NCBI GenBank assembly: GCA_002104945.1
Contig: MCFH01000065.1
Span: 1 to 64,000 of the forward strand
Reading direction: 5' to 3'
DNA: 64,000 nt
Origin: Piromyces finnis finn
Lineage: Eukaryota; Fungi; Neocallimastigomycota
Shown here one piece after another: positions 22,031-59,706 of this stretch. Positions within the stretch are counted from its first letter, which is position 1, and each line of letters starts with the position of its first letter. The position numbers and the translations under genes were made by a program. Under the pieces are notes generated by a model. It was not told the DNA's origin, ran no database searches, and saw only the letters and a list, made by a program, of their open reading frames with translations.

Positions 22031-28191
<6,161 letters not shown>

Positions 28192-34483: not shown

Positions 34484-34512
34484 TAATATTCCATCAGACG
34501 ATATACGATGAC

Positions 34513-37261: not shown

Positions 37262-37333
37262 ATTTTGTATCAAGGTGTGAGTCGAACCCGAGTGATCCAG
37301 ATTAATGTCTTAAATATTAACCATTAAGACAAT
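37262..37333 (-). other. tRNA-like Pol III cassette in the 5' LTR of element A
   Basis: Second copy: GTCTTAATGGTTAATATTTAAGAC hairpin and GGTTCGACTC B-box. Confidence 0.55.
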
Positions 37334-38218: not shown

Positions 38219-38237
38219 TGGTGGAGATATCGGGGAT
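38219..38237 (+). promoter_or_regulatory. Primer-binding site of element B, tRNA-Ala-like
   Basis: TGGTGGAGATATCGGGGAT, 7 nt after the 5' LTR; its complement ATCCCCGATATCTCCACCA resembles the eukaryotic tRNA-Ala 3' end. Confidence 0.75.
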
Positions 38238-38627
38238 AATAATAACATATTGATATCACACTACATTTTTATAGTTACTTTTATAATTGTTTTTGTATTA
38301 TTATTTAATTAAAATAGTTAATAATTCAAAAGAGGGTTATACTAGTATAATAAAAAGTTATATACTTCAAGGCACAAATTAAAATAGTTAATAGAGAGAA
38401 ATTAATATTGTTAATTGGTGCAGTTAAGGAAGTATTTTATATTGGTATTACTAGTTTAACTAAAGAGAATAATTATTAGTGTTGTTAATTAAATATATTT
38501 CAAATATTGTTGTAATTCATTCTTTTAAATTCTTATAAAAGAAAATTATTTTTTTTTAAACTTGTTTCATTCTTTAATATTATTGTAAAATTGTATTTTT
38601 ATCTTTATTTAAAACTTGTATATAAAA

Positions 38628-39536
38628 ATGAGTACGGGAGCTGATAAATCTATTGACTTTGCTAAATTAATGAAGGAATTAAAGCATGTCACTAGATTAA
38701 CCGAAGATAATTTGGACATTAAGACTTGGTATAGTCAATTAAAGTATTGGACTATGCTTCAAGATGTTAAAAGTCCAAAAATGGTGTTTCTAGCTTGTTT
38801 GTTTACTACTACAGGAACACCAAATGAACTTATTCAAGAGTTGAATCCTAATAAGGACTTCGAAAGTGATGAAGACAGTGAAGATAGTGATGAAGAAGAT
38901 GAAGGTAGAGGAAAGAGAAGAGCTCACTACCCTTCCCTTAAAAAGATAGTCACTATGTTAGAAGAATTTTATGGAGTAAAGGAAGATCAAATAGAACTTC
39001 TCAAGGAGCTTAGGGATATGCGAATCAAAAAGAATGAAAAAGTAAAAGACTTCAACATAAGGTACCGTTCCTTGTATGTCAAACTAGACAAGAAGCGTAG
39101 AAGGAAAGTAGATGTTGAAGATTACTTAGATTCCATTGAGCCTAACTATAAAGCCTGGGAAAATGTGCGTAGGGAAAAAGAAGTTACCTTAGCAGAAGCC
39201 TACAAGCTTGCCGAAGATGGGGACAGACTAAATTTAAGAAATCGTCATAAAGCTAACAATTATGATGTATCCACCTCTTCTAACTCTGATAAAAGATATA
39301 AAAATAAATATGAAAGAAAAGAAGATAGCTATGAAAGGAACAAGAAGCCAACAATAGCGAATTATGGTAATGATAAGAAAGATCCTATGAATGAGTTGAC
39401 GGAGAAAATGAGAAACTTAACTATCAAAACTTGCTACTTTTGCAACGAGAAGGGACACTTTCAATATCATTGTCCTAAGCTGAGTGCCATAGTAGAAGAA
39501 AACAAACAAAAGGCCAGAAAAGGTCATTTAAATTAG
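38628..39536 (+). CDS. gag: Element B Gag with CCHC zinc knuckle
   Basis: ORF from ATG 38628; CYFCNEKGHFQYHCP; ends GHLN*. Confidence 0.9.
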   Translation: MSTGADKSIDFAKLMKELKHVTRLTEDNLDIKTWYSQLKYWTMLQDVKSPKMVFLACLFTTTGTPNELIQELNPNKDFESDEDSEDSDEEDEGRGKRRAHYPSLKKIVTMLEEFYGVKEDQIELLKELRDMRIKKNEKVKDFNIRYRSLYVKLDKKRRRKVDVEDYLDSIEPNYKAWENVRREKEVTLAEAYKLAEDGDRLNLRNRHKANNYDVSTSSNSDKRYKNKYERKEDSYERNKKPTIANYGNDKKDPMNELTEKMRNLTIKTCYFCNEKGHFQYHCPKLSAIVEENKQKARKGHLN

Positions 39537-42500
39537 ATAGTGGGAGAAGAAGCACTCCCAGTAATCCAAAAATAGCTTCACTTAATAACAGTTCAGTTGA
39601 TAATAATGAGTACTCTGAATATTCTGAGTATTCTGACTTATCAGATAATGAAGAAATATCTTCTATTGAAGATAAAATTATTGCTGCAGCTAAAAGAAAA
39701 GCTAATGATGAAGAAGACTCTTCCAAGAAAAGAGTACAAAAATCATTAAAAGAAGACCCAAGACCAATAGTTACCCCTGCTACTAGGAAGCAACAAGAAC
39801 GTGAACTCAGTAATGAGAGTTTAGAATCAGGTTCACCATCACAACCCAAGAACCAACTTGACACGTCTGTTCTGAGTCAACCTAATATTAACAAGGAAAA
39901 AGAAAAAAGTAAAAGACTCAGAGAAAAACAAAGAAGTAAACCACCAACCCCCATAAATAAAGACGAAAGAGAAGAAAACGAAGATATGGAGGTCAGTATT
40001 GATACGGAAGATAAAGTAGAAGTAGAAAAAGCTAAAAAGAAAAATACAGATATTCTACCGACGTTATTGAAAATGACTAAAGATAAAGAAAAAGATAAAA
40101 CTAAAGAGGAGAAAGTCACACGTAATATCCAAATGAGAGGTGATACCAGTGATTATGATATTTTTGAAGATTTAAACACAGCTAAATGTGATATTACTTA
40201 TGGACAGTTATTTAATGTATACCCAAAAATAAGAACACAACTTTCCCAAGGACTAAAGTTAGAGAAAGTACAAAGCAAGGTATCAGGTGCATTAAATAAC
40301 ATAGTAGCTACTACAACCTTATTAAATAATATCTACCATGACTATATAAGTAAGAATAATGAAGCTTCAGAAGAGGATATAGCAATGGTGGATGCGACTG
40401 TGGATGGAATACCAGGAAAACTACTGGTGGATACGTGTAGTAACTTAAATGTTATTACATCTTCTTTTTACAAAAGACTACCAAAGGAATATGAAGTGGT
40501 AGGAATAAGCAAAGGACGTATTCGACTAGCTACTACTGATGAAGAATACTCTGAGGGTACTGTGGTGCGTATACCAGTTAGAATAGGAGAGGTAGAACTA
40601 GTGGTTGACTTCAGAATACTTGAAAAAGAAGAACCGTTCTATGATATGTTAATAAATTATAAAACTCAAGTAGATAATTTATTATATATAAATCCAGTAA
40701 CCAAGAGCTTATGTCAAGTGAAAGAAAGAGGTGTAGTAGAAGAAATAGTACCTATCAATAACCAATATTATAATGAAGGAAAATTGGTATGTACTATTAA
40801 GAAGATACCAGATGGAGATACTAAAAGCTTGAAGTCTATTGAAGGTTTACCACCTCAGGAGTATATACACAATGAGATATTCTTGAACACCTTACCAAAA
40901 GATAAACGGAAAGAAATACTCCGACTTTTGGAAGAAAACTTAGAGATTATTGCGACGTCTTCTGAGGAATTAACGCCTTCTAAATTATCACCACATAAAA
41001 TAAATCTAAAGGCTGGTGTAAAACCAGTTAAACAAAGAGCTTATAGGTTAACTAAATTTAAATCAGATATACTAAAAGAAGAGTTAACTAAGCTAATAGA
41101 AAAAAAGTTAATAGAGCCGTCCTATTCAGAATGGTCCTCCCCTGTAGTTCTGGTTCCAAAACATAATGGTAAGTGGAGAATGTGTGTGGACTATAGGAGA
41201 GTGAACGACCTCACGGAAAAGGACTCTTATTCACTCCCCTATATTGATGAAATATTTGATAGTCTGAACGGAGCCAAAATATTCACTACTATGGACTTAT
41301 ATTCAGGTTATCATCAAATTTCTATGCATGAGGAAAGCACTGAGGTTACTAGTTTTACTACCAAGTTTGGTAACTATCAGTTTAAGGTCATGCCGTTTGG
41401 GTTAACTAATGCACCAGCAACTTTTCAGAGGGAAATGAATAAGATATTATTTCCTTTAATAGGAAATTGTGTATATAATTTTATTGATGATGTACTCATA
41501 TATTCCAAGAGTGTGGAAGAACACATGGAACATATTAAGAGAGTATTTGAAATATTGAAAGAAAATGAATTAAAAATAAATCTTGAGAAATGTAGTTTTA
41601 TGAAGGAAGAAGTAAATGTATTAGGTCACAGGTTATCTACTAAAGGTTTGAGTCCTTTGGAAAGTAAAATAGAAGCCATAAGGAAGTGGGAAGCTCCAGG
41701 AAATATTCATGAGTTACGTTCATTTTTGGGTGCAGTAGGATATTATCGAAATTTTATTCCTAATTATTCTCAAGTAACCGCGCCCTTATGTGAGTTATTA
41801 AAGAAAAATGTACGATATAAATGGGAAGAAAAACATGAAAAAGCATTTAAAGTATTAAAAGAAAAACTGATAAACGCTCCCATTTTAAAGTTTCCTGAAT
41901 TTGATAAGCCTTTTATCATACGTACGGACGCGTCGTATGAAGGAGTGGGTGGTGTTTTATTACAAGAAGATGAAACTAACAAAATAGAACACCCTGTACA
42001 TTATATTAGTCGAAGTCTTAGTAAAGCGGAGAAGAACTATGGAATAACAGAGTTAGAAGGTGCTGCGTTATTCTTTTGCGTGAGTAAGTTAAAACCTTAT
42101 ATTTTAGGAAACCCGTACACTACTATGGTTTATACGGACCATAAACCACTTTTGGGTTTATTTAAAAATAAGGAACCAAATAGTGCACGTCACAACAGAT
42201 GGTGTCTTACAGTAAGTCAGTTGGATATTGATATTCAATATGATAAAGGAAAGAATAATGTTATAGCTGATGCATTATCAAGAATGAAGAATAAAGAGGA
42301 GAAAAAGATACTGGTAACAAAAATTAATAAAACTAATAATGAAGAGTTATTAACCAAAGTTATTAAGGAGTTTATAGCTGAAAAATTTACTACCATAGAT
42401 GGGAAGGACTATTTCGTAGATGGTAATAACTTACGTCAGCTAATATCTACTGTAGAAGAAAAAGTAAAGTTAATATTTCAAGCACATAACGTAGGTCATG

Positions 42501-43504
42501 AAGGTTATTATAAGACTTATCAAAGGTTAAAGAAAAATTATTATTGGAATGATATGATAGCGGATATTAAAAGAATTATTAGCAAGTGTGAGAAGTGTCA
42601 AGTAAATAGACCACAACCTTATCCAGAACCAACTGAGGACAAAGCTACTAAAGTGGAAGGACCATTTGTACATCTAGGTTTGGATATTATTGGGCCATTA
42701 CCTAAGACAAGAAATAGTAAACAATATATAATAGTCATAGTTGACTATTTTACTAAATGGGTAGAAGCCGAAGCGGTGGAAACTGTTACTTCTCTGGACG
42801 TGATAAAGTTTTTAATAAATGTGTTTGCAAGACATGGGGTACCACAAGTTATTACTACAGATAATGGAACTCAATTTACCTCAGATATGACAAAGATATT
42901 TCTAGACCTATATGACGTATATGTGAAGTTCACAGTTCCCTACCACCCTGAAAGTAATGGATTAACAGAAAACCGAAATAAGGAAATTGGGAAACTTTTA
43001 AGACTTTTAGGGAAAGAAAGTAAAGACTGGGATGAAGTTCTACCTTCCGCGCTTTGGGCCTTAAGAACTACAAAGAATACGGCTACGAAACATTCAAGTT
43101 TTGAGCTAGTTTATGGTAGGGAAGACCAACAACCTTTTGATATAGCTGCCCGACCCACTAAAGATCAAAACAAGAGTTCCGATGAAATTCTTTTGGAAAA
43201 GTTTATAAATCACTACCGATGGACCCTAGAAGCTGCTGAAAATGTAAAGACGGCTAATAAATATTGGTCTATGAGAAGAGAAGAAAAATTAAGTATGAAC
43301 CAAGCTAAGAAAATAAAAGTAGGTGACCTAGTTTTGGTAAGAAACTTCAGTAGAACAAAATTGGAACCTTACTTTGTAGGACCTCTCAAAGTGGTCCAGA
43401 AACAGTTCAATACAGTAGTCTTAGCAGACCCAGAAACTGGAGTACTAATGAACAGAAACGTACATTTCAAAAATGTCGTTAAATATAACTCAGCAACGGA
43501 GTAG
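39527..43504 (+). CDS. pol: Element B Pol (PR-RT-RH-IN), -1 frame entered at slippery site T TTA AAT (39527-33)
   Basis: The -1 frame is stop-free from 39527 to 43504. VDTCS protease motif, FIDD RT motif, TDAS, HNVGH..CEKC, LDII/TDNG/ENRN, YFVGP. No chromodomain. Confidence 0.9.
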   Translation, partial: FKLDSGRRSTPSNPKIASLNNSSVDNNEYSEYSEYSDLSDNEEISSIEDKIIAAAKRKANDEEDSSKKRVQKSLKEDPRPIVTPATRKQQERELSNESLESGSPSQPKNQLDTSVLSQPNINKEKEKSKRLREKQRSKPPTPINKDEREENEDMEVSIDTEDKVEVEKAKKKNTDILPTLLKMTKDKEKDKTKEEKVTRNIQMRGDTSDYDIFEDLNTAKCDITYGQLFNVYPKIRTQLSQGLKLEKVQSKVSGALNNIVATTTLLNNIYHDYISKNNEASEEDIAMVDATVDGIPGKLLVDTCSNLNVITSSFYKRLPKEYEVVGISKGRIRLATTDEEYSEGTVVRIPVRIGEVELVVDFRILEKEEPFYDMLINYKTQVDNLLYINPVTKSLCQVKERGVVEEIVPINNQYYNEGKLVCTIKKIPDGDTKSLKSIEGLPPQEYIHNEIFLNTLPKDKRKEILRLLEENLEIIATSSEELTPSKLSPHKINLKAGVKPVKQRAYRLTKFKSDILKEELTKLIEKKLIEPSYSEWSSPVVLVPKHNGKWRMCVDYRRVNDLTEKDSYSLPYIDEIFDSLNGAKIFTTMDLYSGYHQISMHEESTEVTSFTTKFGNYQFKVMPFGLTNAPATFQREMNKILFPLIGNCVYNFIDDVLIYSKSVEEHMEHIKRVFEILKENELKINLEKCSFMKEEVNVLGHRLSTKGLSPLESKIEAIRKWEAPGNIHELRSFLGAVGYYRNFIPNYSQVTAPLCELLKKNVRYKWEEKHEKAFKVLKEKLINAPILKFPEFDKPFIIRTDASYEGVGGVLLQEDETNKIEHPVHYISRSLSKAEKNYGITELEGAALFFCVSKLKPYILGNPYTTMVYTDHKPLLGLFKNKEPNSARHNRWCLTVSQLDIDIQYDKGKNNVIADALSRMKNKEEKKILVTKINKTNNEELLTKVIKEFIAEKFTTIDGKDYFVDGNNLRQLISTVEEKVKLIFQAHNVGHEGYYKTYQRLKKNYYWNDMIADIKRIISKCEKCQVNRPQPYPEPTEDKATKVEGPFVHLGLDIIGPLPKTRNSKQYIIVIVDYFTKWVEAEAVETVTSLDVIKFLINVFARHGVPQVITTDNGTQFTSDMTKIFLDLYDVYVKFTVPYHPESNGLTENRNKEIGKLLRLLGKESKDWDEVLPSALWALRTTKNTATKHSSFELVYGREDQQPFDIAARPTKDQNKSSDEILLEKFINHYRWTLEAAENVKTANKYWSMRREEKLSMNQAKKIKVGDLVLVRNFSRTKLEPYFVGPLKVVQKQFNTVVLADPETGVLMNRNVHFKNVVKYNSATE

Positions 43505-44396
43505 CTTGAGTTTTAACGAAGGGCATTCTGTTAAGGAATGAACATAAATAGTTGAATTAGCTAGAATTTTAGGAATTAACCTTCAACTATTTATATTCCT
43601 TACTAGTGTTTAACTCTATTTTTAAAATATAAAAATTATAATATATAATTTTTATACATTTTTCTAGTAATTATTCATATTTTTATTATATAGTTATATT
43701 ATTTGTATATAGTTATTTAAGACCTTTATTATTAGTATTAGTATAATTACTTATAATATTTTATACTTATAAATTTTACAAAATTTTATTATTAAAATAG
43801 TTATAGGAATTTTATTATTATTTAAGGTTTATTTTATTAATTAACTTTATTGTATAATATTTTATAATTTGAAATTATGACATAGAATTTAATTATAATT
43901 TTTACTAAAAGAGGCAACTGTTACACACAAAACAGAAGATACCTCGACAGAAAAATTATTATTTATGTCTAAAAAAGGGCATAATTAATTGAATAATATA
44001 ATTTTATTATATGTCATAATTAAATATATAATATATGATATGCAAAAATGTTACACATATCATAAATTAAAATTTTATTAATTATAAATTAAAAATTTTT
44101 CTATTCAAATATTAAGAGATTATTCATAATATATATTAAGGATTTAATTAATATATGTTACAGTGAATGATCCATATATTATGAATGAAATCAATTTAAA
44201 TCCTTAGCTATCCAAAACCATTAAATTTCAAATAATGGATAGTTGGAAAAAGTACGAGGATTTTTGAGAAAATTTTTAAAAATTGAAAAATCAAAAATAA
44301 ATTAAATGAATAAAAATTAAAATTAAATAAATTTTTATTTTTATAACTATTCAAGTGTTTTGTGATATCTTATTTGAACCGTAGCAATTCATTACA

Positions 44397-47117: not shown

Positions 47118-48734
47118 TTATATAGAATCCTTTCTCGAAGGAATTTCAATTACAAATGGTTGGTATCTGTGCTTGATTAGATTACCAGCTTTATTCTTTC
47201 TAATTTTCATGGAGGAGTCGTTCGACTTATGTTTTGACTTTTTAGAGTTTCTTTTAAACTCTTGTATTAATTGTTTATCTGGAATCTGATCTTCCGAAAT
47301 CCAAGTGGATTTGTCAAATCCTTTCCACGATGAATTATAAAATGTTTCACCATTAACAGATTTCATCTTCTCAATTTTCTCTGGATTTTTTTCAATCAAA
47401 TCTGTGTTAAGGTGAATGTTCCTCTTCCTACGATTAGACCTATCGTTAAACTCGTTTTCAAAGTATGGTTCTAACAATGAGACATGAAAGACTGGATGAC
47501 ATCTCATTGTCTTTGGAAGTTTCAATTTGAAAGCGAGAGAACTAACTTTTTCAATTATCTCAAATGGACCAAGCATTTGAGGTGCTAATTTTTTCTTTAA
47601 GTTAGTTCCAGGAGAATCTTTCAATAACCATACTTTCTTTCCCACTTCGAACTCCGGGGGACTCATTCTTTTCATATCGGCATATTTCTTATATGTTTCT
47701 TTTGCTTTTTCTAAATTTTCTTTTAATAATTTAAAGTTTTCATTCATATCAATTACTCTTTGTTCAGCTCTACTAGGTCTATCATTAGCTGGAATTTCTA
47801 AGCTGAACTTTAGATGAAAACCATAATTAGCAAAGAATGGCGATTGATTTATAGATTGTTGTAAAGTATTGTTATATGCAAATTCAGCAAATGGGATAAG
47901 ATCAACCCAGTTATTCTGCTTTTTATTTATAAAACAACGGAAATATTGTTCTAATATGCCGTTCACCCTCTCCGTTTGACCATCTGTCTGCGGATGGTTG
48001 GCAGTTGATAATGAATGATTGATATTAAGAAGGTCACAAAGTTTTGACCAAAAATCAGAAGTAAATTGCGAGCCTCTATCAGAGATGATGGAATCAGGAA
48101 GACCATGCAAACGGAAGACATTAGCAATAAAAGCATCAGCAGCAATCGAAGCGGTAGGAAGACAACGTAAAGGAATGGCGTGAGCAAATTTAGTAAATCT
48201 ATCGACAACAACCATGAGAGTTGTCATATCTCTGGACTTAGGAAGATCAACAATAAAATCAATAGAAATATCAGACCAGGGCCTACTGAGAGTGACCAAA
48301 GGGGATAACAATCCATAAGGCTTATGTCTGGGGACTTTGGATTTGCAACAAGTCACGCAAGATTTGATAAAAGATTTAACATTTGAATGAAATCTTGGCC
48401 ACCAAAAGTTTCTATAAATCAGTTCAGTGGTTTTCTTAATACCGAAATGACCAGCAGCAACAGAATCATGATGAAGTTCCAAAACTCTTGTCCTAAGAGA
48501 TTTAGGAACATAAATAAGATTATTATATAACAAAAATCCTTCATTATCAATAATAACTTTATCAATATTTTTAATAGGTACATTACATGCAGAACCATTC
48601 ATTTTAAATTGGACAATAGAATTATACAAATCGTCATTTTTAAGTTCTAATAAAATAGAATCGATTAACGGTTTGTTATCGCTATGATGAAGCGAAATAG
48701 TAAGACAAAAAACATCAGAATTAATATTATTCAC
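47118..48734 (-). pseudogene. pol: Element D integrase and degenerate chromodomain
   Basis: HHDSVAAGHFG..CVTC, IDFI/SDRG/ERVN, LGPFEI, NPEKIEKMKSVNGETFYNSSWKGFDKSTWISE. Confidence 0.85.
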
Positions 48735-49389
48735 TAAATGGTCACTTCTACGAGACAGGATATCAGGCTTACCTGATTTCTTTCCAGCTCTATAAATGAG
48801 TTTAAAATCAAATCTGGATAAGAATAAATTCCATCTAATTTGTCACTGAGCTAGCATTTCAGGTTTTCTAGGAAATGTTAAATTCTTGTGATCAGTATAA
48901 ATTATGAACGGATGGCGTGCACCTTCTAAATAATGACGCCATTCTTCAAGAGCAACTATAATAGCTAAAAGTTCCTTGTCATATATAGGATAGTTTCTTT
49001 GACAACTCGTCAAACTTTTAGAAAGAAATGCAATAGGATGTAATCTGCTGTAAAGAAATGTGTCTTTAACAATAAAACAAATTATAATATTTACTAAATA
49101 ACTTAGTAATATTAACACTTTAAAATATTCTGTAAATTATTAATTTATAAAAATATCATTAAAAACACATAGAATTTAACTTAATAAGTTAGTGTTTAAT
49201 AATATAATTATTTATTAATAAAATCTCGATTCTTTAAAATATTTGGGAAAATTCACTCGTATTTATACTAAAAATTTTTTAAATTAATTTATAAAATTTT
49301 TTCAACTTAAAATTCTTAACCAATCAATAATCTTCATATAAAATAAAATTTAAAAATAAAATAAAATAAAATAAAATTATAATTTTTTT

Positions 49390-49462
49390 AAAATAGTATC
49401 TATGAGGTCTCGAACTAGTGTCATTCAGACTCAAAGTCTTAGCTACTAACCACTAAGACAAT
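49390..49462 (-). other. tRNA-Gln(TTG)-like Pol III cassette in the 3' LTR of F
   Basis: TTGTCTTAGTGGTTAGTAGC-TAAGA-CTTTGAG-TCTGA-ATGAC-ACTAG-TTCGAGA-CCTCA..TATTTT: A-box, anticodon arm, 5-nt variable loop, B-box and T-tract. Confidence 0.65.
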
Positions 49463-49793
49463 TTAGTTATTTCTAGTATTCGTTACATGGTCCTCCTCCA
49501 GGATTCGGATACCAGACGAATCTAGAATTTTAATATTTAAATATATGTTTTTCTTTTTTAATAAACTAAACTAAGGAGTGAATTTTCTTAATTATAAAAA
49601 TACATTTAATATAATAAAATACATTTTTTTTTAATATTACTAAAGTTAAAAATAAAATATTGATAAATTTGATATTAATAAATTGTTTAATAATAAAATT
49701 GATATTGATAATGATATTAATAAGTTTTGATAATAATAATAATTGTGATTTTAATATTAATAATAAATATAATTTGAATTTTTTAACTATTTT

Positions 49794-52700
49794 TTATTTC
49801 TTTCTATTAAATTTTTTAAGTAGCCCCTTGCAATTTAGATTTTCTTCAGGCTCCCACGAAGCTTCATTAATTGAATACCCTTTCCATTTAATCAGGTATT
49901 GTATTTTTCCGTAATGTCTTCTTTTATCCAGAATTTCTTCAACTTCGTATTCTTCTTCATTGTCAACGGTAATAGGTGGCGGTGGTGGTTGAGATCTTCC
50001 AAATTTATCTTCGACATATTTCTCGAGATTGGATACATGAATAACTGGATGAATCTTAATAGATTTTGGGAGACTTAATTTAAATGTAACATTTGATATT
50101 TTTTCCAAGATTTTGTATGGGCCGAGTTTTCTTGGCTTAAATTTTTTATTTCCTTTGTGGATAATTAAAGAACTATCCAGCCAAACTTTAAAATTCGGAG
50201 CTTCTTTTCTACGTTTGTCAGCATGCTTCTTCTGGGTTTCCATGGCAGATTTTAAATTTTCTTTTAAGGTATTAATTAAAGTTTTAAAATCTCTTGTAAA
50301 CTCTTCTGCTCTTGGGACTTTAGATAAGTCTGGAATAACTGGTGAATATTTTGGATGAAAGCCGTAATTCAAAAAGAATGGAGAAAATTTGGATGATTCT
50401 TGAACCACGTTGTTATAACTAAATTCTGCAAGACTAAGAAAACTTTTCCAATTTGAACCTTTATAATTTGAGAAACATCTTAAATATTGTTCTATAACGG
50501 AGTTCACCCTCTCCGTCTGACCGTTTGATTGATGATGAAATGGAGTAGACAACTTAAGTTCAATGCCAAGGGAGGAACAGATGGATTGGAAGAATTTAGA
50601 AGTAAATTGAGAACCTCTATCCGAGACAATAGATTCAGGTAGGCCATGAAAACGGAAAATATTATCAATAAAGGCTGTGGCTGTTTCGGCGGCGGAAGGA
50701 ATACTTTTGAACGGAATGAGATGAACCATTTTTGTAAGACGATCAACAACAACAAGAATGCAAGTGAAACCAGAAGATGAAGGCAAATCTGTAATGAAAT
50801 CCATTGAAATGGATGACCAAGGACGCTCAGCAATATCAAGAGGATTCAGAAGACCATAAGGTTTATGACGAAAGGTTTTTGAACGACAACAAACTTCACA
50901 AGAACGAACGTAGTCTTTAACATCAGAAGAAATAGAAGGCCACCAGAAGTCTCTAGCAATAAGAGAAGATGTTTTCTTTATTCCGAAATGACCAGCTGAA
51001 GGAGAGTCGTGACAGAGTTTAAGAATTGAAAGACGACAATTTGGAGGAACATAGATTCTGTCAGTAAAAAGGAGAAAACTATTGCTTAAGGAAAATTTGT
51101 CAATTTGAGGGTGAGGTATTGGAGGTTTCCTACAATCAAGATATTCACAGATTTTATTGTAAAAGTCATCATTTATATATTCGGAAAGAAAAGAATCACT
51201 AATGGACGAAACAGAAGTCACAATGGCACAAAAGTTTTCAGGGCGAAGAACATTAAAAGGAACATCAGAAGAGGAATTCGAATTGATAGCATAATCAGGA
51301 CGACGAGATAGAGCATCAGGCTTACCGTTAGAAGAACCAGAACGATAAATAATAACAAAGTTAAATTCAGAGAGAAACAAAGCCCAGCGAACAAGACGTT
51401 GAGACATTTTTTCAGGTTTCTTTTGATAGAGTAAATTTCGATGATCCGAGTAAATCTTAAAAGTAGAAGAAGAGCCTTTAAGTAGATGACGCCATGTTTC
51501 AAGAGCAGCAACGATAGCTACGAGCTCTTTATCATATATTGGATAATTACGTTCAGGACCAGTAAGAGAGCGAGAAAAGAAAGCAACTGGATGGGTCATA
51601 TTATCAATTGGAGAGACTTGCGAGAGAATAGCACCAATGGCAAAGTTACTTGAATCAGTTTCGACTATGAATGGAAGTTCACGATTAGGAAATATAAGAA
51701 CAGGAGCAGAAACAAATAAGGACTTGAGTGAATCGAAAGCATCTTGAGCTTCTTTAGACCATACAAATTTAACATTTTTCTTCAAAAGTTTATGCAAAGG
51801 ATGAGCGATCTTTGCAAAATTTGGAATAAATCGACGGTAGTAGTTCGCAAGACCAAGAAAAGATTGAACCTCTTTAACATTAGATGGAGTAGGCCAGTTT
51901 AAAATAGAAGAAACTTTATTTGGGTCCATGTGAATACCATCAGTAGAAATCCTATGACCAAGGAAATCAATAAAAGAAACAAAAAACTCGCATTTTTCCA
52001 ATTTAGCATAGAGCCCAGCATCCCTCAGGAGTTTCAAAACAGTTTTGACATGAGAAATATGAGATTTATAATCAGAGGAAAAAATAATAATATCATCTAT
52101 GTAAGAGAAAGCGAATTTACCAAGAACGTCTTCAAGAACATCATTAATGAAATGTTGAAAAACAGCAGGTGCATTTTTCAACCCAAAAGGCATCACACAG
52201 TATTCAAAATGACCTAACTTGCAAGTAAAAGCGGTTTTATATTCATCACCACTTTTAATCCTGACCAAGTTATAGGCAGAACGAAGATCCAATTTTGAGA
52301 AAATCTTCCCTTTTCCAAGATGTTCAAGCATATCTTGTATAAGAGGAAGGGGATAAGAATCACGAATAGTTATGGAGTTTAATTGGCGATAGTCAACACA
52401 CATACGAAGTTGACCGTTTTTCTTAGGTACAAACAGAATAGGAGCTCCCGCAGGCGATTTTGATTTTCTAATAAATCCTTTCTTGAGATTTTCTTTTATA
52501 TATTCTTCTAAAGCAATTGATTCGGTTTCTGTTAGAGGATAAATCGGTCCATAAAACAGTTTTGAATTTTCTTTGAGTTTTATTTCACAATCGTATGGAC
52601 GGTGTGGAGGAAGTTTTTCAGCATTAGATTCATTGAAGACATCAGCAAAGTCAGAGAGAACATCCGGAAGTATAATAGAAGAATTGGGTTCTGATTTAGA

Positions 52701-54224
52701 GTTTGAATCGGATTTGAGAATAGAATTGGATTGAATATTAGAATCAGAAAAAGAAGTCAAAACAGAAGTTGGTTCTTGATTTGAGAGAGACGAAGTAGAA
52801 AAGTTAACAGAAGACTTCTTAGAAACAGAATTGTTAATATTTTTTGAAGAACCCGAACAGAGAATAGTACAAGTACGATTAGTTTCGTTTTGAGATTGGA
52901 TGTTTTGTTTATCGACAAATATAGGGTAAGCGAATGAATCATGCGGAGGTTCGTAGGAAGGATCTTCCATTGCAGGAAAAGCAGATCTTTCTTCAGGAAA
53001 TTCAGAGACATTATTGGAGAGTGTTATACAACGATTATAACAGTAATCGGATACAAATGAAATTTTGTTCTTTGTGAAATCGATAGAAGGATTGTGTTCT
53101 TTAAGCCAGTCTATTCCAAGAATACAAGGATAATAAGGTAGATCAGTTACATAGAATTGTGTTCGACAGAGATGATCTTTGTAGCGAAGATTCAAAGGAG
53201 ATGTAATTCCAAAAAGAGATTGTCGACCACCGATACCAACGATATTTGGGAGGTTACCATCATCATGATAAGGAATGTTATTATCGTTACAGTAATCTAC
53301 ATCAATTAAATTAAGTTTGGATCCTGAGTCAATAAGAATATCCGTATTTAGTTCATAAGAAAGTTTAAATTTAGTTGTCATTTTATTATGAGTTTTGTTT
53401 TCTTCTTTAGGAGCGGATATAAGTGTGGGAATAGATATTAGTGAAGGATTTTCACGATCTTTATTCTTTCTTTTTGGACAATTATTAATCTTATGACTTG
53501 AAGCACCACAATACACACAAAGATTTTCTTTCTTTCTTCTTTCCTTTTCTTCGTTTGAGATAGGGCCATGGTTATTCCTGTTTGTAATGGACTTTGTTAT
53601 TTTTGAAGAGTGATGAAAAGATCTTTTCTTTCGGTTTTGGTCATTGTTTGAACCAGAAGGGAAAAAGGTATGGTGTGTAGATAATCTTGAATCGATTCTT
53701 GAAGCAATAGTCTGTAATGAAAGAAGATCCCTAGGACCCGGAAACATTTCCAAAATACGAACTGCAACTTGTTGATTAAGGCCAGCTATAAATGCATCCA
53801 TTTTGGCTTGTTCATTCCAGTTTGATTCATCAGCATAGCGGTTAAATTCCAAGATATAGCCTCTAATTCCTCCTAATCGGCGTTGTTTTAAGGTTCTAAG
53901 CATTTGATTTGCAACATAGGTAGCATCGTTATAACCATAAAAAGCCTTAAATCTGTCAACAAAAGCTTGGTAGTTATTAAGACACGGATCATGGTTGTTT
54001 ATAAGAGTAGCAGCCCAATTCATAGCGTCCCCATAAAGTCTTGATATTATATAGAGAATTTTGGTTGCGTCGTCTTGATACCGTTCAGGATATAGCATAA
54101 ACACTAGCTCCACCTTAGCTAAGAAACCCTTCAGATACCTGCGATCCCCTGCAAAACCATCCTTAAGAGTTGCGTTTTCGAAAATATTATTATTATCCAT
54201 GTGGTTGTTTTCGTTCTCTTCCAT
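49794..54224 (-). CDS. gag-pol: Element F single-ORF Gag-Pol with C-terminal chromodomain (1476 aa)
   Basis: [102 protein letters not shown]; no stops. Confidence 0.95.
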
Positions 54225-55456
54225 AGTACTTATGATGTTTTCTTTAATAAGCTTTAATAAATTTGTAAAAATAATAGAATAAAGTATTTAATTATATTTA
54301 TTAATTGAGTAAATCTTTTTATTAAATAATAATACAAACCAGATTATATAGTGTTAAACCATCAAATATATAACCTGTTTTATTCTTTATAATAAGTCCT
54401 TCGTAGCTCTTCACGATAACACGTATAAAGTCGATTGTTAATATTAATTAAATTAATAAAAGAAAGGAACGGTGTAAAAATTTTTTTTAGTGTCTAACTT
54501 ATTGTTAGCAATAAAAATTATTACAGGTTTTCTTTCCCTATATCAACCTTATCCGAACGTAGAAGTATTATGTATAAGAGTTTAACTTCTCACGCTAAAG
54601 GAGTTATAAAGAATATTATTTTATTTTATTACAATTTTAATAAATTGTCTTAACAATTAATAATTATAATTAAAAATTAGAAATTGTTTTATTAGAAAAC
54701 TTAATTTTAAAATGTATTAATTAAGAAATATTATTTTATTAAAGTAAGGCATTTCCGGCTATTTTCCGGTCTATAATCAAACAGCAAAAGATAGTATACA
54801 ACTATAAATCTCACGCCAGCTTGCTTATTACAGCGTCTTGTACGTGGTGTACCTCGGATTCTCCTACTTCCTTATTCAAAGTAGAATAGCTCAGAGCCTG
54901 CCAACCCAATTATTGTACAGGTTAAACTCGATCCCGTTAATCTTTTACTTTTTATAGTTTGAATTATATACCGCTTCTAAAGCGTACTAATTCTACTACT
55001 TTAAGTAAAAATATTTCTTTAAAGAAAAGCTTCAACAATAAAACTTAAAAGTTTTATCTATAACAATTCCTTAAACACTAAGGTATTAAGCTTTTATATT
55101 ATAAGGAGATTTTATTGTAAAGAAATGTGTCTTTAACAATAAAACAAATTATAATATTTACTAAATAACTTAGTAATATTAACACTTTAAAATATTCTGT
55201 AAATTATTAATTTATAAAAATATCATTAAAAACACATAGAATTTAACTTAATAAGTTAGTGTTTAATAATATAATTATTTATTAATAAAATCTCGATTCT
55301 TTAAAATATTTGGGAAAATTCACTCGTATTTATACTAAAAATTTTTTAAATTAATTTATAAAATTTTTTCAACTTAAAATTCTTAACCAATCAATAATCT
55401 TCATATAAAATAAAATTTAAAAATAAAATAAAATAAAATAAAATTATAATTTTTTT

Positions 55457-55529
55457 AAAATAGTATCTATGAGGTCTCGAACTAGTGTCATTCAGACTCA
55501 AAGTCTTAGCTACTAACCACTAAGACAAT
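55457..55529 (-). other. tRNA-Gln(TTG)-like Pol III cassette in the 5' LTR of F
   Basis: Identical copy of 49390-49462. Confidence 0.65.
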
Positions 55530-55641
55530 TTAGTTATTTCTAGTATTCGTTACATCTGCCATCAAATTCTTGAGAGAGAATAGCACCGACAGCATAATTA
55601 CTAGCATCAGTTTCTACAATAAATTGTTTATTACTATCCGC

Positions 55642-57121
55642 TGTAAAAGTTTATAAAAAACAGATTATAAAATTTTACAATAAAACATAAAACACGAAAT
55701 AAATAAAAAGAAACAAGAAAAACAAAATCTATTTAAAAATATCTCTTTTATTAATTTTATTTAGTTATTAACTAAATAATAGTCAATAACAATTACATCG
55801 TTTTAATAAAGAAATTTTACATGTATTTATATTTTTCGTAAATTATATTTTAATATACTATTCTATTTAATTATACATATATTCAATATAAAATAAACAA
55901 AACTAATTTAATACTAATTTAATTAAATAATAAAATAATAAAACTAAACTAAAACTAATTAAATAAACTTTTGATTCAATTTGAGTAAACTGCAAATTGA
56001 ATACAGTCCATGTATTACCTATTGTAAAATATTAATCTTAAAACAGATTATATATTTAACAATAAAACAATTAAACACACGATAAAATAAAAATAGGAGT
56101 TTCTTTTTAAAAATTATCTTCTTTATTAATGGTTAGAAATAAAATAACAATTACATCGATTCAATTGATAAAATTTACATGTATTTATATTTTTTCGTAA
56201 TTATATTCTAATATATTATTCTATTTAAATAAACATATATTTAATATAAAATAAACAAAACTAATCTAATTAAATAATAAAATAATAAAACTAAACTAAA
56301 ACTAATTCATTATACTTTTAATTCAATTTGAGTAAACTCAAAATTGAATAAAGCTCAGGTATTATCTATAAATTAATTAAATATTATTAATACTATTCTT
56401 AATATATTTCCTATTGAAATATAAACACATCTATTTTTAAAACTCAGTTAAAATTATTAAACTATTCTAAATTTAAATAAGAAAGTATATTATTATTAAA
56501 CTATTCTAAAATTAAATAAAAAGTATTTAAAAAATATTTTAATTATTTAAAATATTTAGAATATTTAAATTTAATTAAAATTCTTTTATTCCTTAAATTT
56601 AAATATTTATCTTAATTTAAATTTAACGGAATTATTATAAAATAATTTATTATTAAATTATTCCATAAAATTTATTCAAAAATTTTATAATAAGTTTTAC
56701 TAAATATTAATTTATTATTTAATAATTAATAATTAATTATTAAATAATCTAAAGATATATATTATATCTTTACACCTATATATTAATTAAATATTAACAA
56801 TACTATTTAATATATATTTATAATCAAAAATGCTAATTTCAAACTACGCTAAAGTTATTAAACTAATTTTAATTAAATAAAAACTTTTTTAAGATTTAAT
56901 TTGAATATTTAAAATATTTAAATTTAATTATCCATTAATTTAAATATTTATCCAAATTTCATTTGTAACTTTGATATTTTAAAATTAATCTTTATTTAAT
57001 TATTCCATAAAATTTATACAATAAATTTTATAAATAATTTTTTATTAAAATATCAAAATTATTATTCAATAATTATTAATTAATTATTAAATAATTTAAA
57101 GATATACTTTATATCTTTACA
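55642..57121 (-). mobile_element. Older X-family solo LTR in D's RT/RH junction; TSD TCCGC/TCCTC
   Basis: TG...CA ends; flanks 55637-41 and 57122-26 differ by one base; contains a second X LTR. Confidence 0.8.
56023..56774 (-). mobile_element. X-family solo LTR (752 bp) nested in the older X LTR; TSD CCTAT
   Basis: Reverse complement of 45474-46224; CCTAT at 56018-22 and 56775-79. Confidence 0.88.
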
Positions 57122-57612
57122 TCCTCATGTTTCAGAATAGGAGCTGACGTGAACAGAGTTTTTAATAAAATAAAAGCGTCCTGATCTTCTTTCACCCAGT
57201 TAAAAGCAACATTCTTTCTAGTGAGTTTGTGAAGAGGGTTTGCAATTTTAGCAAAGTCTTTAATAAAAATTCTGTAATAGTTGCATAAACCAATAAAAGA
57301 CTGAACCTCTTTAACATTCTTGGGAACCGGCCAATCGAGAATTGCTTTAACTTTATTTTCGTCCATTTGTAACCCATCTTTTGAAATGACATATCCAAGA
57401 AAAGTGGTTTTCTCAACATCAAACTCGCATTTTTCTAATTTAACATAGAGGTTATTTTCAAGTAGTTTCTTAAGTACCTTTTTAACATGTTCATGATGTT
57501 CTTCGATATTATTAGAATAAATAAGAATATCATCAATTTATGAGATAACAAAATCGTCTAAATAGTCACTAAGAACATCGTTAATGAAGTGTTGAAAAGT
57601 TGCAGATGCATT

Positions 57613-59706
57613 CTATAATCCAAAAGGAATAATCAGATATTCAAAATGTCCATATCTAGTACGAAAAGCCGTTTTGTATTCGTCACCTTCTTTAATACGA
57701 ACAAGATTATAAGCGGATTTAAGATCTAATTTAATAAAAATCTTAGCATTTTTCACCCTATCCAAAAGGTCACTAATTAAAGGTAAAGGATATGAATTAC
57801 GAATGGTAATATCATTCAACTTTCTATAATCGATACAAAGTCTTAGGGAGCCATCCTTCTTTTTAACAAATAAAATTGGGGCACCAGCAGGAGACGATGA
57901 TTTCCTAATAAAACCTTTATTTAAATTATCATCAATATATTTTTTAAGTTCCTCTCTTTCAACTTCAGTTAATGGATACAAAGGTCCATAAAATAAAGTC
58001 GAATCATCTTTAAGTTTGATTTCACAATCATAAGATCTATGAGGAGGTAACACTTCACAATTTTTTTCATTAAACACTTCACTAAATTCTAAATATTGGG
58101 TTGGTACGGCGACCAATTTATCTTTATTAATATCTTTTCCATTATTATTATTATTACTACATGATTCGTTATCATTATTACATGTTTCATTAATTTTTGT
58201 TACAATACATTTAACTTTTTTATTAAAACTAATATATTCATCATCGCTATCATCTTCATCATTGATGGTTCTAACAAGGCGGCCTTTAACATATTCTTTT
58301 TCTTCATTGTTTGGGACAGAGGGATCTACTTTTGGCTTTTTGGTCAAGCTTCGGTCGAGAACATCATGATCTAACTGATCATTCTTTGACTTCTTTCTTG
58401 GTTTTCTCTTTCTTTTGCCTTTATTACAATGTCTGGCACAATAACCAGAACTAAAAGCGATTTTCTTAGAGTCGTAGAAAGCATTTGGATTATGCTTCTT
58501 TATCCACGGCAAACCAAGAATAACATCAACACCGGGGACTTGTAATCCATAAAGTTGAATTACTTCGAAGTGATTTTTGCAACGGAGCATGCACTTCTCA
58601 GTCCTTTCCCAAACACTAACAACTCCATCACTAACACCTGAAACACGGAATGGTTCCACTTTTTCCAAATTAATACCAAGGTCTTCAGCAAGACTTGGAT
58701 TAATGAAATTTAATTCAGAACCGGAATCAATTAAAACCTTAATTTTAACTTCCGAAACTTCATTGGTACTCAAGTAAAAATCCACAAGGTTTAAATCACT
58801 TTTCACTCCCTTGACTCCAACTTTGTAAATTTTTGGATTAACAATTTTTGGAGTCCTTTCTTTAACAATTCTTAACACTTTTCTGGGCTTTACTCTATTA
58901 GGACAATTAAATTTTAAATGTCCCGGTTGTTTACAAAGAAAACATAACCCTTTTTTCTTTTCTTCTTCAAAGTTATCTATGTTTTCATTGTAATTTTTAC
59001 TTGATCCTTGGATATTCACATACCTTCTACGCTTGTTTTCTCAACTAATTCTAAATACATCCACATCCATAGGATCATCAGCCCTTCTACTATTAAAATA
59101 AAATTCACTAAGCGAATTTCTTTTCATCATATCTTCAACTAAAATAGTTGAAGAAATCAATTGTTCAATTGAAGTTGGGTTTGATTCAATGAAAGCCAAC
59201 TTCTCCCTAAGTGGTGGTAATAAACCTTTCAGAAACATGTAGATTTTTGCGCTATCATTAAAGCTTGAATTTTGGCTAATACGTTGAAACTCGGTAATGT
59301 AATCTAATACCTGACCAAGTTTCCTTTGGCCAAGATTATCTAATTTTCCGTTAGCTACAACGGTATCGTATCTATAACTGCCAAAATTAGCCTTCAACCT
59401 ATCTACAAATTCATCATAATGATTTAAAACCCCACTATTATTCTTCATCAACACTGAAGCCCATTCCAAAGGTTTACCAGAGAAGTATGATATAACGAAG
59501 TCGACCTTGACTCGATCTGTATTATACAGTGTCGGTCGAGTACGAAATACCAACTCCACTCTAGTTAAAAATCCATCTAATCCACGTTGTTTACCAGAGA
59601 ATATCGGTGGAGCATTAATAATGTTCCCCGAGTTCCCGGAAACACCCACATTCCTATCACCCATTTCCAAATTCAAATTTTCAAATTCACTAATTAAACC
59701 CTCCAA
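57613..59706 (-). pseudogene. gag-pol: Element D gag-protease-RT N-terminal part with in-frame TGA at 59041-43
   Basis: Gag ends PMDVDVFRIS*, then the same frame continues [12 protein letters not shown]...[21 protein letters not shown] and RT start. Confidence 0.88.

What the first reader, a model, noticed from the sequence alone, without database searches (positions are those of the whole stretch)
49390..49462. tRNA-shaped RNA Pol III cassette built into the U3 of two chromovirus LTR families
Seen: 25-95 nt inside each F LTR, the sense strand has tRNA geometry. There is an A-box-like TTGTCTTAGTGGTTAG, an anticodon arm TAAGA-CT[TTG]AG-TCTGA (4 of 5 pairs, Gln anticodon), a 5-nt variable loop, the B-box GTTCGAGAC about 46 nt after the A-box start, then TATTTT. 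The otherwise highly diverged A LTRs (31590-31659, 37262-37333) keep the same layout with GGTTCGACTC. Both families fold the A-box into a 7-bp hairpin with a compensatory change (GTCTTAG/CTAAGAC in F, GTCTTAA/TTAAGAC in A). The acceptor and T stems do not pair, so this is not a tRNA gene. Established: A/B boxes recruit TFIIIC; tRNA genes and B-boxes can act as heterochromatin barriers in yeasts; plant Cassandra elements carry 5S sequence in their LTRs. Inference: these elements may carry a captured tRNA-derived promoter or insulator about 165 bp upstream of their Pol II start in F (about 260 bp in A), shielding it inside a TE-dense region, or may make a small Pol III RNA. I do not know of this being described for fungal chromoviruses.
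Basis: partly seen in the sequence, partly recalled or inferred. Interest (0 to 1): 0.85.

Follow-up and report, generated by a model that had tools for sequence, protein, structure and literature searches.

The report
tRNA-derived Pol III boxes in chromovirus LTRs
A group of full-length retrotransposons from anaerobic gut fungi keeps the two promoter boxes of a long-decayed tRNA gene near the start of each long terminal repeat, so each copy probably carries its own docking site for the RNA polymerase III machinery, something so far described only for tiny non-coding retrotransposons.

Summary
All four LTRs of elements F and A carry, on the sense strand about 21-98 nt into the LTR, an A-box, a B-box at tRNA spacing (43-45 nt) and a T-run. 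I found the same module in 11 further LTR variants from other anaerobic-fungus assemblies. Conservation sits on the positions that are universal in tRNAs and Pol III promoters: 10 of 12 such positions are at least 90% conserved, against 9 of 53 other columns (p = 2.5e-5). Beyond the first 100 nt, the F and A LTRs are no more alike than shuffled sequence. It is not a tRNA. ARAGORN and Rfam find nothing, and the cloverleaf stems pair no better than chance. Two non-tRNA hairpins are kept instead, with some changes on both sides of a pair. The best reading is a tRNA-derived Pol III type-2 promoter (a TFIIIC site) kept under selection in U3. It lies 160-250 bp upstream of a TATA-driven Pol II start in Tf1-like self-priming chromoviruses. 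Whether it makes a small RNA, acts as a chromatin boundary, or both is untested. The closest known case is Helenus (TRIMs with tRNA-like LTRs, Kojima 2024), but these elements are autonomous and 6.5 kb long. One unrelated Ty3/gypsy element sits 12-15 bp upstream of one module, the position Ty3 and DGLT-A take at real tRNA genes. That is a single event and only a hint.

The parts
49390..49467 (-). Module copy in the F 3' LTR. tRNA-position-1 equivalent at 49467, A-box 49450-49460, hairpin 1 arms 49453-49459 / 49436-49442, B-box 49406-49416, T4 run 49390-49393.
   Evidence: covariance-model hit 49382-49471, 77.6 bits
55457..55534 (-). Identical module copy in the F 5' LTR (A-box 55517-55527, B-box 55473-55483).
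   Evidence: model hit 55449-55538
31580..31668 (-). Module copy in the A 3' LTR (B-box 31604-31614; the A-box begins at 31657).
   Evidence: 78.2 bits
37254..37342 (-). Module copy in the A 5' LTR (A-box 37321-37331, B-box 37278-37288). It differs from the 3' copy at 3 positions.
   Evidence: 77 bits
49049..55554 (-). Element F, a complete chromovirus. LTRs 49049-49487 and 55116-55554 (439 nt, identical, TG..CA). 5-bp target duplication at 49044-49048 and 55555-55559. Polypurine tract 49488-49499. One uninterrupted gag-pol ORF 49794-54224 (1476 aa) ending in a chromodomain.
55284..55334 (-). Inferred Pol II promoter and start in the F 5' LTR. TATA box at 55327-55334. The 11 nt at 55284-55294 are complementary to the primer-binding site 55105-55115 plus the last LTR base, which marks Tf1-type self-priming and the U3/R border at about LTR position 261.
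   Evidence: the same layout is seen in A
31164..44396 (-). Element A, a chromovirus with element C nested in its 5' LTR. 3' LTR 31164-31685; 5' LTR 36838-37353 plus 44391-44396. 5-bp target duplication 31159-31163 and 44397-44401.
32399..36576 (-). gag-pol of element A. It is broken once, by a frameshift, and so reads as two ORFs. All domains from gag to the chromodomain are detectable.
37354..44386 (+). Element C, a Ty3/gypsy element without a chromodomain. It has 858-nt identical LTRs and a tRNA-type primer-binding site. Its 4-bp target duplication is at 37350-37353 and 44387-44390. It is inserted at positions 7-10 of the A 5' LTR, which is 12-15 bp upstream of the module's tRNA-position-1 equivalent.
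47118..59706 (-). gag-pol of an older Ty3/gypsy element (H) into which F is inserted, inside its RNase H region. It is broken by that insertion and further split into several ORFs. Its LTR start (about 47062) has no A/B-box module.
49502..49522 (-). Conserved 6-bp hairpin just upstream of the polypurine tract. The same hairpin is at 31700-31720 in A.
   Evidence: one relative keeps the pair through a change on both sides

Best explanation
The segment is the relic of a tRNA sequence captured once, in sense orientation, about 20 nt inside U3 of an ancestral chromovirus of anaerobic gut fungi (Neocallimastigomycota).

The tRNA itself has decayed: there is no acceptor, D, anticodon or T stem. What selection has kept is the internal Pol III type-2 promoter: A-box, B-box, their tRNA-like spacing, and a body free of T-runs followed by a T-run.

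Most likely mechanism (inferred):
1. TFIIIC binds the B- and A-boxes of every LTR copy.
2. TFIIIC places TFIIIB over the LTR edge.
3. Pol III probably makes a 75-90 nt RNA that folds into two short hairpins and ends in U's.
4. The bound complex sits 160-250 bp upstream of the element's own TATA-driven Pol II start. There it could also shield that promoter from the H3K9-methylated chromatin into which chromodomain integrases direct these elements.

Shown here: the module exists, derives from a tRNA, is confined to the first 100 nt of the LTR, and is conserved across at least 15 diverged LTR variants exactly at promoter positions.

Inferred: TFIIIC binding, transcription, and any barrier or small-RNA role.
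For: 1. 15 distinct variants from the window and from other assemblies all carry the module 21-105 nt into the LTR.
2. 10 of 12 universal tRNA / Pol III-box positions are at least 90% conserved, against 9 of 53 other columns, Fisher p = 2.5e-5. T8, A21, G53, T54, T55, A58 and C61 are invariant.
3. T8-to-G53 spacing is 43-45 nt in all variants.
4. The F and A LTRs match at 75 of the first 100 nt (shuffles 61 +/- 2.5). The rest matches at 252 positions, which equals the shuffle value of 254 +/- 4.
5. The module is a G+C island (0.30-0.52) in LTR sequence of 0.07-0.28. It contains no T4 run, and a T4 run follows 11-26 nt after C61 in 14 of 14 variants; the background chance of one within 30 nt is 0.69 per copy.
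6. Relaxed ARAGORN calls a sense-strand tRNA-like fold in 10 of 14 variants, against 9.7% of 1400 shuffles. This is residual tRNA likeness.
7. The non-tRNA two-hairpin fold is kept: 78.9% of cells pair, against 27-53% when partners are slid. Some pairs change on both sides, including in a hit that was not used to build the model.
8. Element C lies 12-15 bp upstream of the module's position-1 equivalent. Ty3 and DGLT-A sit at about 15 bp at real tRNA genes (PMC5006619), and Tj1 at 5-11 bp (PMC4600332).
9. The same logic (conserved boxes, non-functional tRNA) was used to infer Pol III promoters in Helenus LTRs (PMC10886601).
Against: - There is no binding or expression data of any kind.
- The A-box pattern alone is not above chance in this A+T-rich window.
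- T-runs are common here, so the terminator argument is weak (about 0.005 for 14 of 14, and the copies are related).
- The 14-15 variants share ancestry, so counts by column overstate independent evidence.
- The two conserved hairpins are not needed for a DNA-level promoter, and they could point to an RNA- or cDNA-level role in the element's own replication.
- The hairpin-1 register differs between subgroups.
- The element C insertion is a single event, and I could not show that relatives of C target tRNA genes.
- No host tRNA gene was available, so the donor tRNA is unidentified.
Confidence: 0.6

Rival explanations
1. TFIIIC-only boundary element. The boxes bind TFIIIC, as at extra-TFIIIC sites or the fission-yeast IR boundaries, without productive Pol III transcription. 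They serve only to stop heterochromatin from silencing the element's Pol II promoter. This overlaps with the best explanation and differs only in denying an RNA product.
For: - The elements encode a chromodomain integrase and sit nested in other retroelements. A built-in barrier would therefore be useful.
- B-box clusters and tRNA genes act as barriers in fission yeast (PMC4502379, PMC2040200, PMC7474672).
- The B-box is the most conserved block, with a mean column share of 0.89.
Against: - The A-box and its tRNA spacing are conserved as well. Known B-box-only boundary sites do not need them.
- The T4-free body followed by a T-run, and the conserved hairpins, fit a transcript.
- It is not known whether Neocallimastigomycota chromatin behaves like that of fission yeast.
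Confidence: 0.2
2. Replication element of the retrotransposon itself. The two hairpins just downstream of the polypurine tract act in the genomic RNA 3' UTR or in plus-strand DNA synthesis. The A/B-box letters survive only because they form the loop and stem of those hairpins.
For: - Hairpin 2 uses the 5' half of the B-box as its 3' arm, and hairpin 1 encloses the 3' half of the A-box. Both are kept, with pairs changed on both sides.
- The module lies within 100 nt of the polypurine tract, next to another conserved hairpin.
- U3 of the 3' LTR is part of the Pol II transcript.
Against: - A58 and C61 are invariant but lie outside hairpin 2. T8, A21 and the G18/G19 loop letters are conserved without pairing.
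- The hairpin-1 register shifts between subgroups while the box letters stay in place.
- The H and C elements in the same window have no such module.
Confidence: 0.12
3. Pol III-driven small regulatory RNA precursor, like the Pol III pri-miRNA hairpins encoded in the U3 of foamy-virus LTRs. The hairpins would be processed into small RNAs that act on the host or on rival elements.
For: - Same place (U3), same promoter type, and a two-hairpin layout.
- Foamy-virus LTRs encode Pol III-directed dumbbell pri-miRNAs (PMC3993851, PMC7693620, PMC7104284).
- Anaerobic fungi have RNAi machinery (PMC5796279).
Against: - The stems are short: 5-8 bp in F and A, and at most about 16 interrupted pairs in one subgroup. 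That is far below usual Dicer substrates.
- The stem sequences are not conserved, as a guide strand would be.
Confidence: 0.05
4. Neutral relic or chance resemblance. This would be a recent tRNA or SINE fragment with no function, or simply A+T-poor motifs that happen to resemble the boxes.
For: - The A-box alone is at chance level.
- Rfam and default ARAGORN see no tRNA.
Against: - The module is kept in 15 variants whose polyproteins are only 60-70% identical and whose LTRs are otherwise random to each other.
- Conservation is concentrated on promoter positions.
- Relaxed tRNA detection is 7-20 times above shuffles.
- No free-standing copy exists outside LTRs in the window.
Confidence: 0.03

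Closest known systems
Helenus (TRIMp3): terminal-repeat retrotransposons in miniature with tRNA-derived LTR sequence (Kojima 2024, PMC10886601)
   Same: [quoted passage not shown]
- The predicted tRNA is non-functional and its isotype calls are inconsistent.
- PBS and PPT are present, and fungal members make 5-bp target duplications.
   Different: - Helenus elements are non-autonomous, 311-1263 bp long, have no genes, and are thought to use Pol III for their own genomic transcript.
- Fungal Helenus is reported from Pucciniales and a few Agaricomycetes, and is linked to Copia partners.
- Here the carriers are autonomous 6.5-kb Ty3/gypsy chromoviruses of Neocallimastigomycota. They have a separate TATA-driven Pol II start 160-250 bp downstream and a self-priming PBS.
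- The paper itself argues that autonomous partners 'must use' a Pol II promoter and share no long LTR stretch with TRIMp3.
Cassandra TRIMs of plants (5S rRNA-derived Pol III promoter in LTRs; PMC7215508, doi 10.1101/2023.07.14.548913)
   Same: A small-RNA gene fragment with its internal Pol III promoter is kept in both LTRs over long periods.
   Different: The fragment derives from 5S, not tRNA. The elements are non-autonomous, occur in plants, and use the Pol III transcript as their genomic RNA.
Tf1 / Tf2 / Tj1 self-priming chromovirus-type elements of fission yeasts (PMC4600332)
   Same: - Ty3/gypsy gag-pol with the Tf2-type SH3 domain and a chromodomain.
- The PBS is complementary to an 11-nt stretch 38-40 nt after the TATA box, i.e. 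the predicted 5' end of the transcript.
- 5-bp target duplications.
   Different: No A/B-box module has been reported in their LTRs, to my knowledge. Tj1 targets tRNA genes rather than carrying a tRNA relic.
tRNA genes and B-box (TFIIIC) boundary elements of fission yeast (PMC2040200, PMC4502379, PMC7474672)
   Same: Both have a B-box, or full A/B boxes, at the edge of a heterochromatic, repeat-rich domain.
   Different: Those are host loci with demonstrated TFIIIC binding. Here the boxes travel inside a mobile element, and binding is untested.
Pol III-transcribed pri-miRNAs in the U3 of foamy-virus LTRs (PMC3993851, PMC7693620)
   Same: A Pol III unit sits inside U3 of an LTR, upstream of the Pol II promoter, with a two-hairpin layout.
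   Different: The hairpins here are much shorter, the stems are not sequence-conserved, and no small RNA is known. The two cases are unrelated in sequence and host. No sequence comparison was made.

Membership tests
Functional tRNA gene | Cloverleaf: acceptor, D, anticodon and T stems pair | tested here: not met
   37.5% of cells pair, against 42.4% in shuffles. Each stem pairs at 33-43%. Only G53-C61 is invariant.
Functional tRNA gene | Recognised by tRNA detectors or covariance models | tested here: not met
   ARAGORN at default settings finds 0 in the window and in all loci. Rfam finds no tRNA hit at gathering score or at E<=10. Only relaxed ARAGORN (-ps70/80) gives hits, and the anticodons are inconsistent.
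Pol III type-2 (tRNA-type) internal promoter | A-box and B-box matching the consensus at the invariant positions | tested here: met
   T8, A21, G53, T54, T55, A58 and C61 are invariant. G18, G19 and C56 are at 93%, and A14 at 86%. B-box hits have at most 1 mismatch.
Pol III type-2 (tRNA-type) internal promoter | A-to-B spacing within the working range | tested here: met
   T8 to G53 is 43-45 nt in all variants.
Pol III type-2 (tRNA-type) internal promoter | Oligo-T terminator downstream and none inside | tested here: inconclusive
   A T4 run lies 11-26 nt after C61 in 14 of 14 variants, and none lies inside. But the background frequency is high (0.69 within 30 nt), and T5 is absent from the 160 nt examined from the LTR start in 3 variants.
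Pol III type-2 (tRNA-type) internal promoter | TFIIIC / Pol III occupancy and a transcript | not testable with these tools
   No expression or binding data are available.
Helenus / TRIMp3 | tRNA-derived sequence with conserved A and B boxes inside both LTRs | tested here: met
Helenus / TRIMp3 | Non-autonomous, under about 1.3 kb, no coding capacity (PMC10886601) | tested here: not met
   F is 6506 bp with an intact 1476-aa gag-pol.
Chromovirus (Ty3/gypsy with chromodomain integrase) | gag, RT, RNase H and integrase followed by a C-terminal chromodomain | tested here: met
   Pfam finds RVT_1, RT_RNaseH, Integrase_H2C2, rve, SH3_Tf2-1 and Chromo (E = 3e-15) in F. The same set occurs in A.
Tf1-type self-priming elements | PBS complementary to the 5' end of the element's own transcript rather than to a tRNA 3' end | tested here: met
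   A unique 11-nt complement lies 38-40 nt downstream of the TATA box in both F and A. The PBS has no TGG start. The transcript start itself is inferred, not measured.
tRNA-derived SINE | Free-standing copies with a tRNA-like head plus a LINE-related or A-rich tail | tested here: not met
   The covariance model finds only the four LTR copies in 64 kb. All 11 copies elsewhere lie at the same place in an LTR. A genome-wide search was not possible.
Foamy-virus-type Pol III pri-miRNA | Hairpins long enough for Dicer, giving about 22-nt RNAs | tested here: not met
   Stems are 5-8 bp in F and A, and at most about 16 interrupted pairs elsewhere. Small RNAs could not be tested.

The most novel reading that the evidence does not exclude
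An autonomous chromovirus lineage carries a working pseudo-tRNA gene in each LTR. Every insertion would then seed a new TFIIIC/TFIIIB/Pol III site. That site would make a small two-hairpin RNA and insulate the element's Pol II promoter inside heterochromatin. It would also become a landing pad for Pol III-directed Ty3-like elements such as C, so that one family's promoter module steers where another family nests.
Probability: 0.2. Interest if true: 0.8.

Novelty: new variant of a known kind. Interest (0 to 1): 0.6.

Why it matters
LTRs with captured Pol III promoters are known only from miniature, gene-less elements, where Pol III is thought to make the element's own short genomic RNA. Here the same kind of module is kept in full-length, recently active, Pol II-transcribed chromoviruses, where it cannot have that role.

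If it binds TFIIIC, it would be a mobile, self-carried Pol III site or chromatin boundary. That would bear on how heterochromatin-targeted elements stay expressed. It would also bear on how extra TFIIIC sites and tRNA-like loci spread through genomes, and on why retroelements nest where they do.

On the practical side, it explains tRNA-like false positives in relaxed tRNA scans of anaerobic-fungus genomes. It also gives a short, specific marker for this chromovirus clade.

Tried and rejected
- **tRNA detection.** Rfam at gathering score and at E<=10, and default ARAGORN, find no tRNA or other RNA family at the module. The weak SNORD56 hit (E = 1.5) is noise.
- **RNAalifold on the first alignment.** It recovered only hairpin 2, because the hairpin-1 register differs between subgroups.
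- **Whether C-type elements target tRNA genes.** Four long contigs carrying relatives of C had no tRNA genes, no LTR pairs and no recognisable LTR ends. The result is inconclusive. B-box-like hits next to their gag genes turned out to be long tRNA-type primer-binding sites.
- **Viral-contig scan for a 15-nt B-box block.** It gave only unrelated, G+C-rich chance hits.
- **Exact-protein look-up of the F polyprotein.** Not on record. One relative's contig could not be fetched.
- **Self-priming in relatives L011 and L001.** The check was confounded by tandem repeats and partial LTRs.
- **A 'CCA' about 13-16 nt after C61 in 8 of 14 variants.** It might be a trace of a mature tRNA end, but it is 3 nt out of register and lies in low-complexity sequence. 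I left it as a weak lead.
- **Left out.** Comparison with host tRNA-Gln or any host tRNA.
- **Covariance model.** I built a statistical profile from 14 natural 89-nt module copies, for searching only.

Full report
**Context.** The window is extremely A+T-rich, with G+C of 14-36% in 2-kb windows. It encodes a CotH protein with CBM10 fungal dockerin repeats. Relatives of its retroelement proteins include Orpinomyces gene models. The source is therefore most likely an anaerobic gut fungus (Neocallimastigomycota). Coordinates 31-60 kb are a nest of Ty3/gypsy elements.

**Anatomy of the carriers.**
- Element F (49049-55554, minus strand) has two identical 439-nt LTRs (TG..CA), a 5-bp target duplication and a polypurine tract abutting the 3' LTR. 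Its single uninterrupted 1476-aa gag-pol ends in a chromodomain.
- F sits inside the RNase H region of an older element, H.
- Element A (31164-44396, minus strand) is a second chromovirus. Its LTRs are 522 nt, it has a 5-bp target duplication, and its gag-pol is broken once by a frameshift.
- A third element, C (37354-44386, plus strand), has no chromodomain, 858-nt identical LTRs and a tRNA-type primer-binding site. It is nested in the 5' LTR of A with a 4-bp duplication.
- In both F and A the sequence after the 5' LTR does not start like a tRNA-type primer-binding site. Instead it is complementary over 11 nt to a unique LTR stretch 38-40 nt downstream of a TATA box.
- That is the Tf1/Tj1 self-priming layout (PMC4600332). 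It places the U3/R border at about LTR position 261 in F and 348 in A.

**The observation.** On the sense strand of all four LTRs, starting about 21 nt from the LTR end, there are five features:
- an A-box-like 11-mer;
- a 7-bp hairpin around it;
- a B-box-like 11-mer with one mismatch;
- 43-45 nt between T8 and G53;
- a T4 run 13-20 nt after the B-box.

The B-box pattern is rare in this window: 5 hits, 4 of them in these LTRs, against 1.7 expected. The A-box pattern alone is at chance level.

**Is it a tRNA?** No.
- ARAGORN at default settings and Rfam, even at E<=10 on the LTR alone, find nothing.
- I mapped tRNA numbering onto an alignment of 14 variants. The four cloverleaf stems pair in 37.5% of cells, below the shuffled mean of 42.4%. 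Only G53-C61 is constant.
- The F-specific 'Gln anticodon arm' is not conserved. Relaxed ARAGORN assigns Gln, Leu, Thr, Val or His to different variants.
- Residual tRNA likeness is nevertheless real. At the relaxed setting, 10 of 14 variants give a sense-strand call, against 9.7% of 1400 dinucleotide shuffles.

**Relatives.**
- The F polyprotein has relatives at 60-72% identity in rumen and gut metagenomes and in NCBI assemblies.
- I fetched their contigs. I also scanned metagenome contigs for the 20-nt junction of polypurine tract and LTR start, taken from the window. Together these gave 10 further distinct LTR starts.
- A covariance model built from the alignment then found another, independent copy: L012:796-884, 77.6 bits.
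- All 15 variants carry the module at the same place.
- In the alignments, the invariant and near-invariant columns fall on T8, G9, T16, G18, G19, A21, G53, T54, T55, C56, A58 and C61.
- 10 of 12 universal tRNA / Pol III-box positions are at least 90% conserved, against 9 of 53 other columns (p = 2.5e-5).
- The F and A LTRs match at 75 of the first 100 positions (shuffles 61 +/- 2.5). The remaining 340-420 nt are exactly as similar as shuffled sequence: 252 matches against 254 +/- 4.
- The module is a G+C island (0.30-0.52 against 0.07-0.28). It has no T4 run inside, and a T4 run follows 11-26 nt after C61 in 14 of 14 variants.
- The LTR of H has no module, and the model finds none in C. The model finds only the four LTR copies in the window.

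**Structure.**
- Each variant folds into hairpin 1, which encloses the 3' half of the A-box (6-8 bp, up to about 16 interrupted pairs in one subgroup).
- Most variants also fold into hairpin 2, whose 3' arm is the 5' half of the B-box.
- Counted on the alignment, this fold pairs 78.9% of cells (hairpin 2: 89.7%), against 27-53% when partners are slid. Several pairs change on both sides.
- The independent L012 copy shows a further two-sided change in hairpin 1.
- Two cautions apply. The structure was derived from these sequences, and the hairpin-1 register differs between subgroups.

**Interpretation.** Loss of every tRNA stem, combined with retention of exactly the promoter positions, the spacing and a terminator-like T-run, is the signature used to infer Pol III promoters in SINE heads and in Helenus LTRs (PMC10886601).
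- I therefore read the module as a tRNA-derived type-2 Pol III promoter, a TFIIIC site, under purifying selection in U3.
- The conserved A-box and the hairpins favour a real transcription unit giving a 75-90 nt RNA.
- The chromodomain integrase and the nested, repeat-rich setting make a boundary role plausible as well, as with tRNA genes and B-box elements in fission yeast (PMC2040200, PMC4502379, PMC7474672).
- These two roles are not exclusive, and sequence alone cannot separate them.
- A role of the hairpins in the element's own RNA or cDNA remains a serious rival.

**A hint from the nest.**
- Element C is inserted at LTR positions 7-10 of the 5' LTR of A. That is 12-15 bp upstream of the module's tRNA-position-1 equivalent.
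- Ty3 and DGLT-A insert about 15 bp upstream of mature tRNA starts (PMC5006619), and Tj1 inserts 5-11 bp upstream (PMC4600332).
- A random insertion would land within 10-20 bp upstream of one of four modules in 64 kb with a probability of about 0.001. That figure is post hoc.
- I could not confirm that C-type elements target tRNA genes, because the available contigs of relatives lacked usable flanks. This remains a single suggestive event.

**Comparison with what is known.**
- The closest described case is Helenus/TRIMp3, alongside Cassandra (5S). These are non-autonomous miniature elements whose LTRs hold a small-RNA-derived Pol III promoter (PMC10886601, PMC7215508).
- The present elements share the LTR feature but fail the defining features of that group: non-autonomous and under about 1.3 kb. 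They are Tf1-like self-priming chromoviruses with a separate Pol II promoter.
- Kojima's screen kept only elements under 1 kb. It remarks that other Repbase LTRs contain tRNA-like pieces, so the phenomenon may be wider than described.
- I found no paper describing it for autonomous fungal chromoviruses or for Neocallimastigomycota.
- Foamy-virus U3 Pol III pri-miRNAs are a functional analogy only (PMC3993851, PMC7693620).

**Verdict.** 'tRNA-shaped' is wrong. 'tRNA-derived Pol III promoter or insulator kept in U3' is well supported as a conserved sequence feature and untested as a function. It is a new variant of a known kind.

**Declared slips and limits.**
- The A/B-box patterns were general consensus motifs from my own knowledge.
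- I once began recalling a tRNA sequence in my reasoning and stopped. Nothing from memory entered a conclusion.
- The comparison with host tRNAs was left out because no host tRNA sequence could be referenced.

Noticed in passing
window 49502-49522 (-) and 31700-31720 (-); same place in L001, L011, L014-L019, L021: A 6-bp hairpin with a 9-nt loop lies immediately upstream of the polypurine tract, in the non-coding stretch after the pol stop. It is almost invariant across families. In L014 the outer pair is changed on both sides (G-C to A-T), so it looks like a selected RNA or DNA structure next to the plus-strand primer.
   Followed up: partly
window 37350-37353 / 44387-44390 (target duplication of element C, 37354-44386): A chromodomain-less Ty3/gypsy element is inserted 12-15 bp upstream of the tRNA-position-1 equivalent of the module in the A 5' LTR. 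Ty3 and DGLT-A use the same position at real tRNA genes. This is a single event.
   Followed up: partly
window 55105-55115 with 55284-55294; 36827-36837 with the A LTR about 38 nt after its TATA box: Both chromoviruses have a primer-binding site complementary to their own predicted transcript 5' end (Tf1-type self-priming) rather than to a tRNA.
   Followed up: yes
window 11499-12404 (+): An ORF of 301 aa has weak Pfam matches to a viral replication protein (Viral_Rep, below cutoff) and an RNA_helicase (P-loop) domain. It may be an endogenous Rep-like gene of a small circular ssDNA virus or a related plasmid-like element.
   Followed up: no
window 23674-28191 (+): A 1505-aa ORF without any Pfam match is built largely of degenerate 15-nt (5-codon) tandem repeats (repeat families D1 and D2).
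   Followed up: no
window 4379-6652 (+): A CotH kinase-like protein carries three CBM10 (fungal dockerin) repeats and a CBM1, an architecture typical of anaerobic gut fungi. It supports the assignment of the source organism.
   Followed up: partly
L023 about 657-679 and L026 about 612-635 (minus-strand text): Relatives of element C have unusually long tRNA-type primer-binding sites. Complementarity runs 20 nt or more from the CCA end into the T-loop.
   Followed up: no
L012 572-884: Two module-bearing LTRs lie head to head about 90 nt apart. The plus-strand LTR lacks its first about 4 nt, so its start is truncated or interrupted close to where C interrupts the A LTR.
   Followed up: no
window 47020-47062 (-): The LTR of the older host element H starts with an 11-bp perfect hairpin instead of an A/B-box module. 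Several unrelated elements here therefore place a hairpin just inside U3.
   Followed up: no
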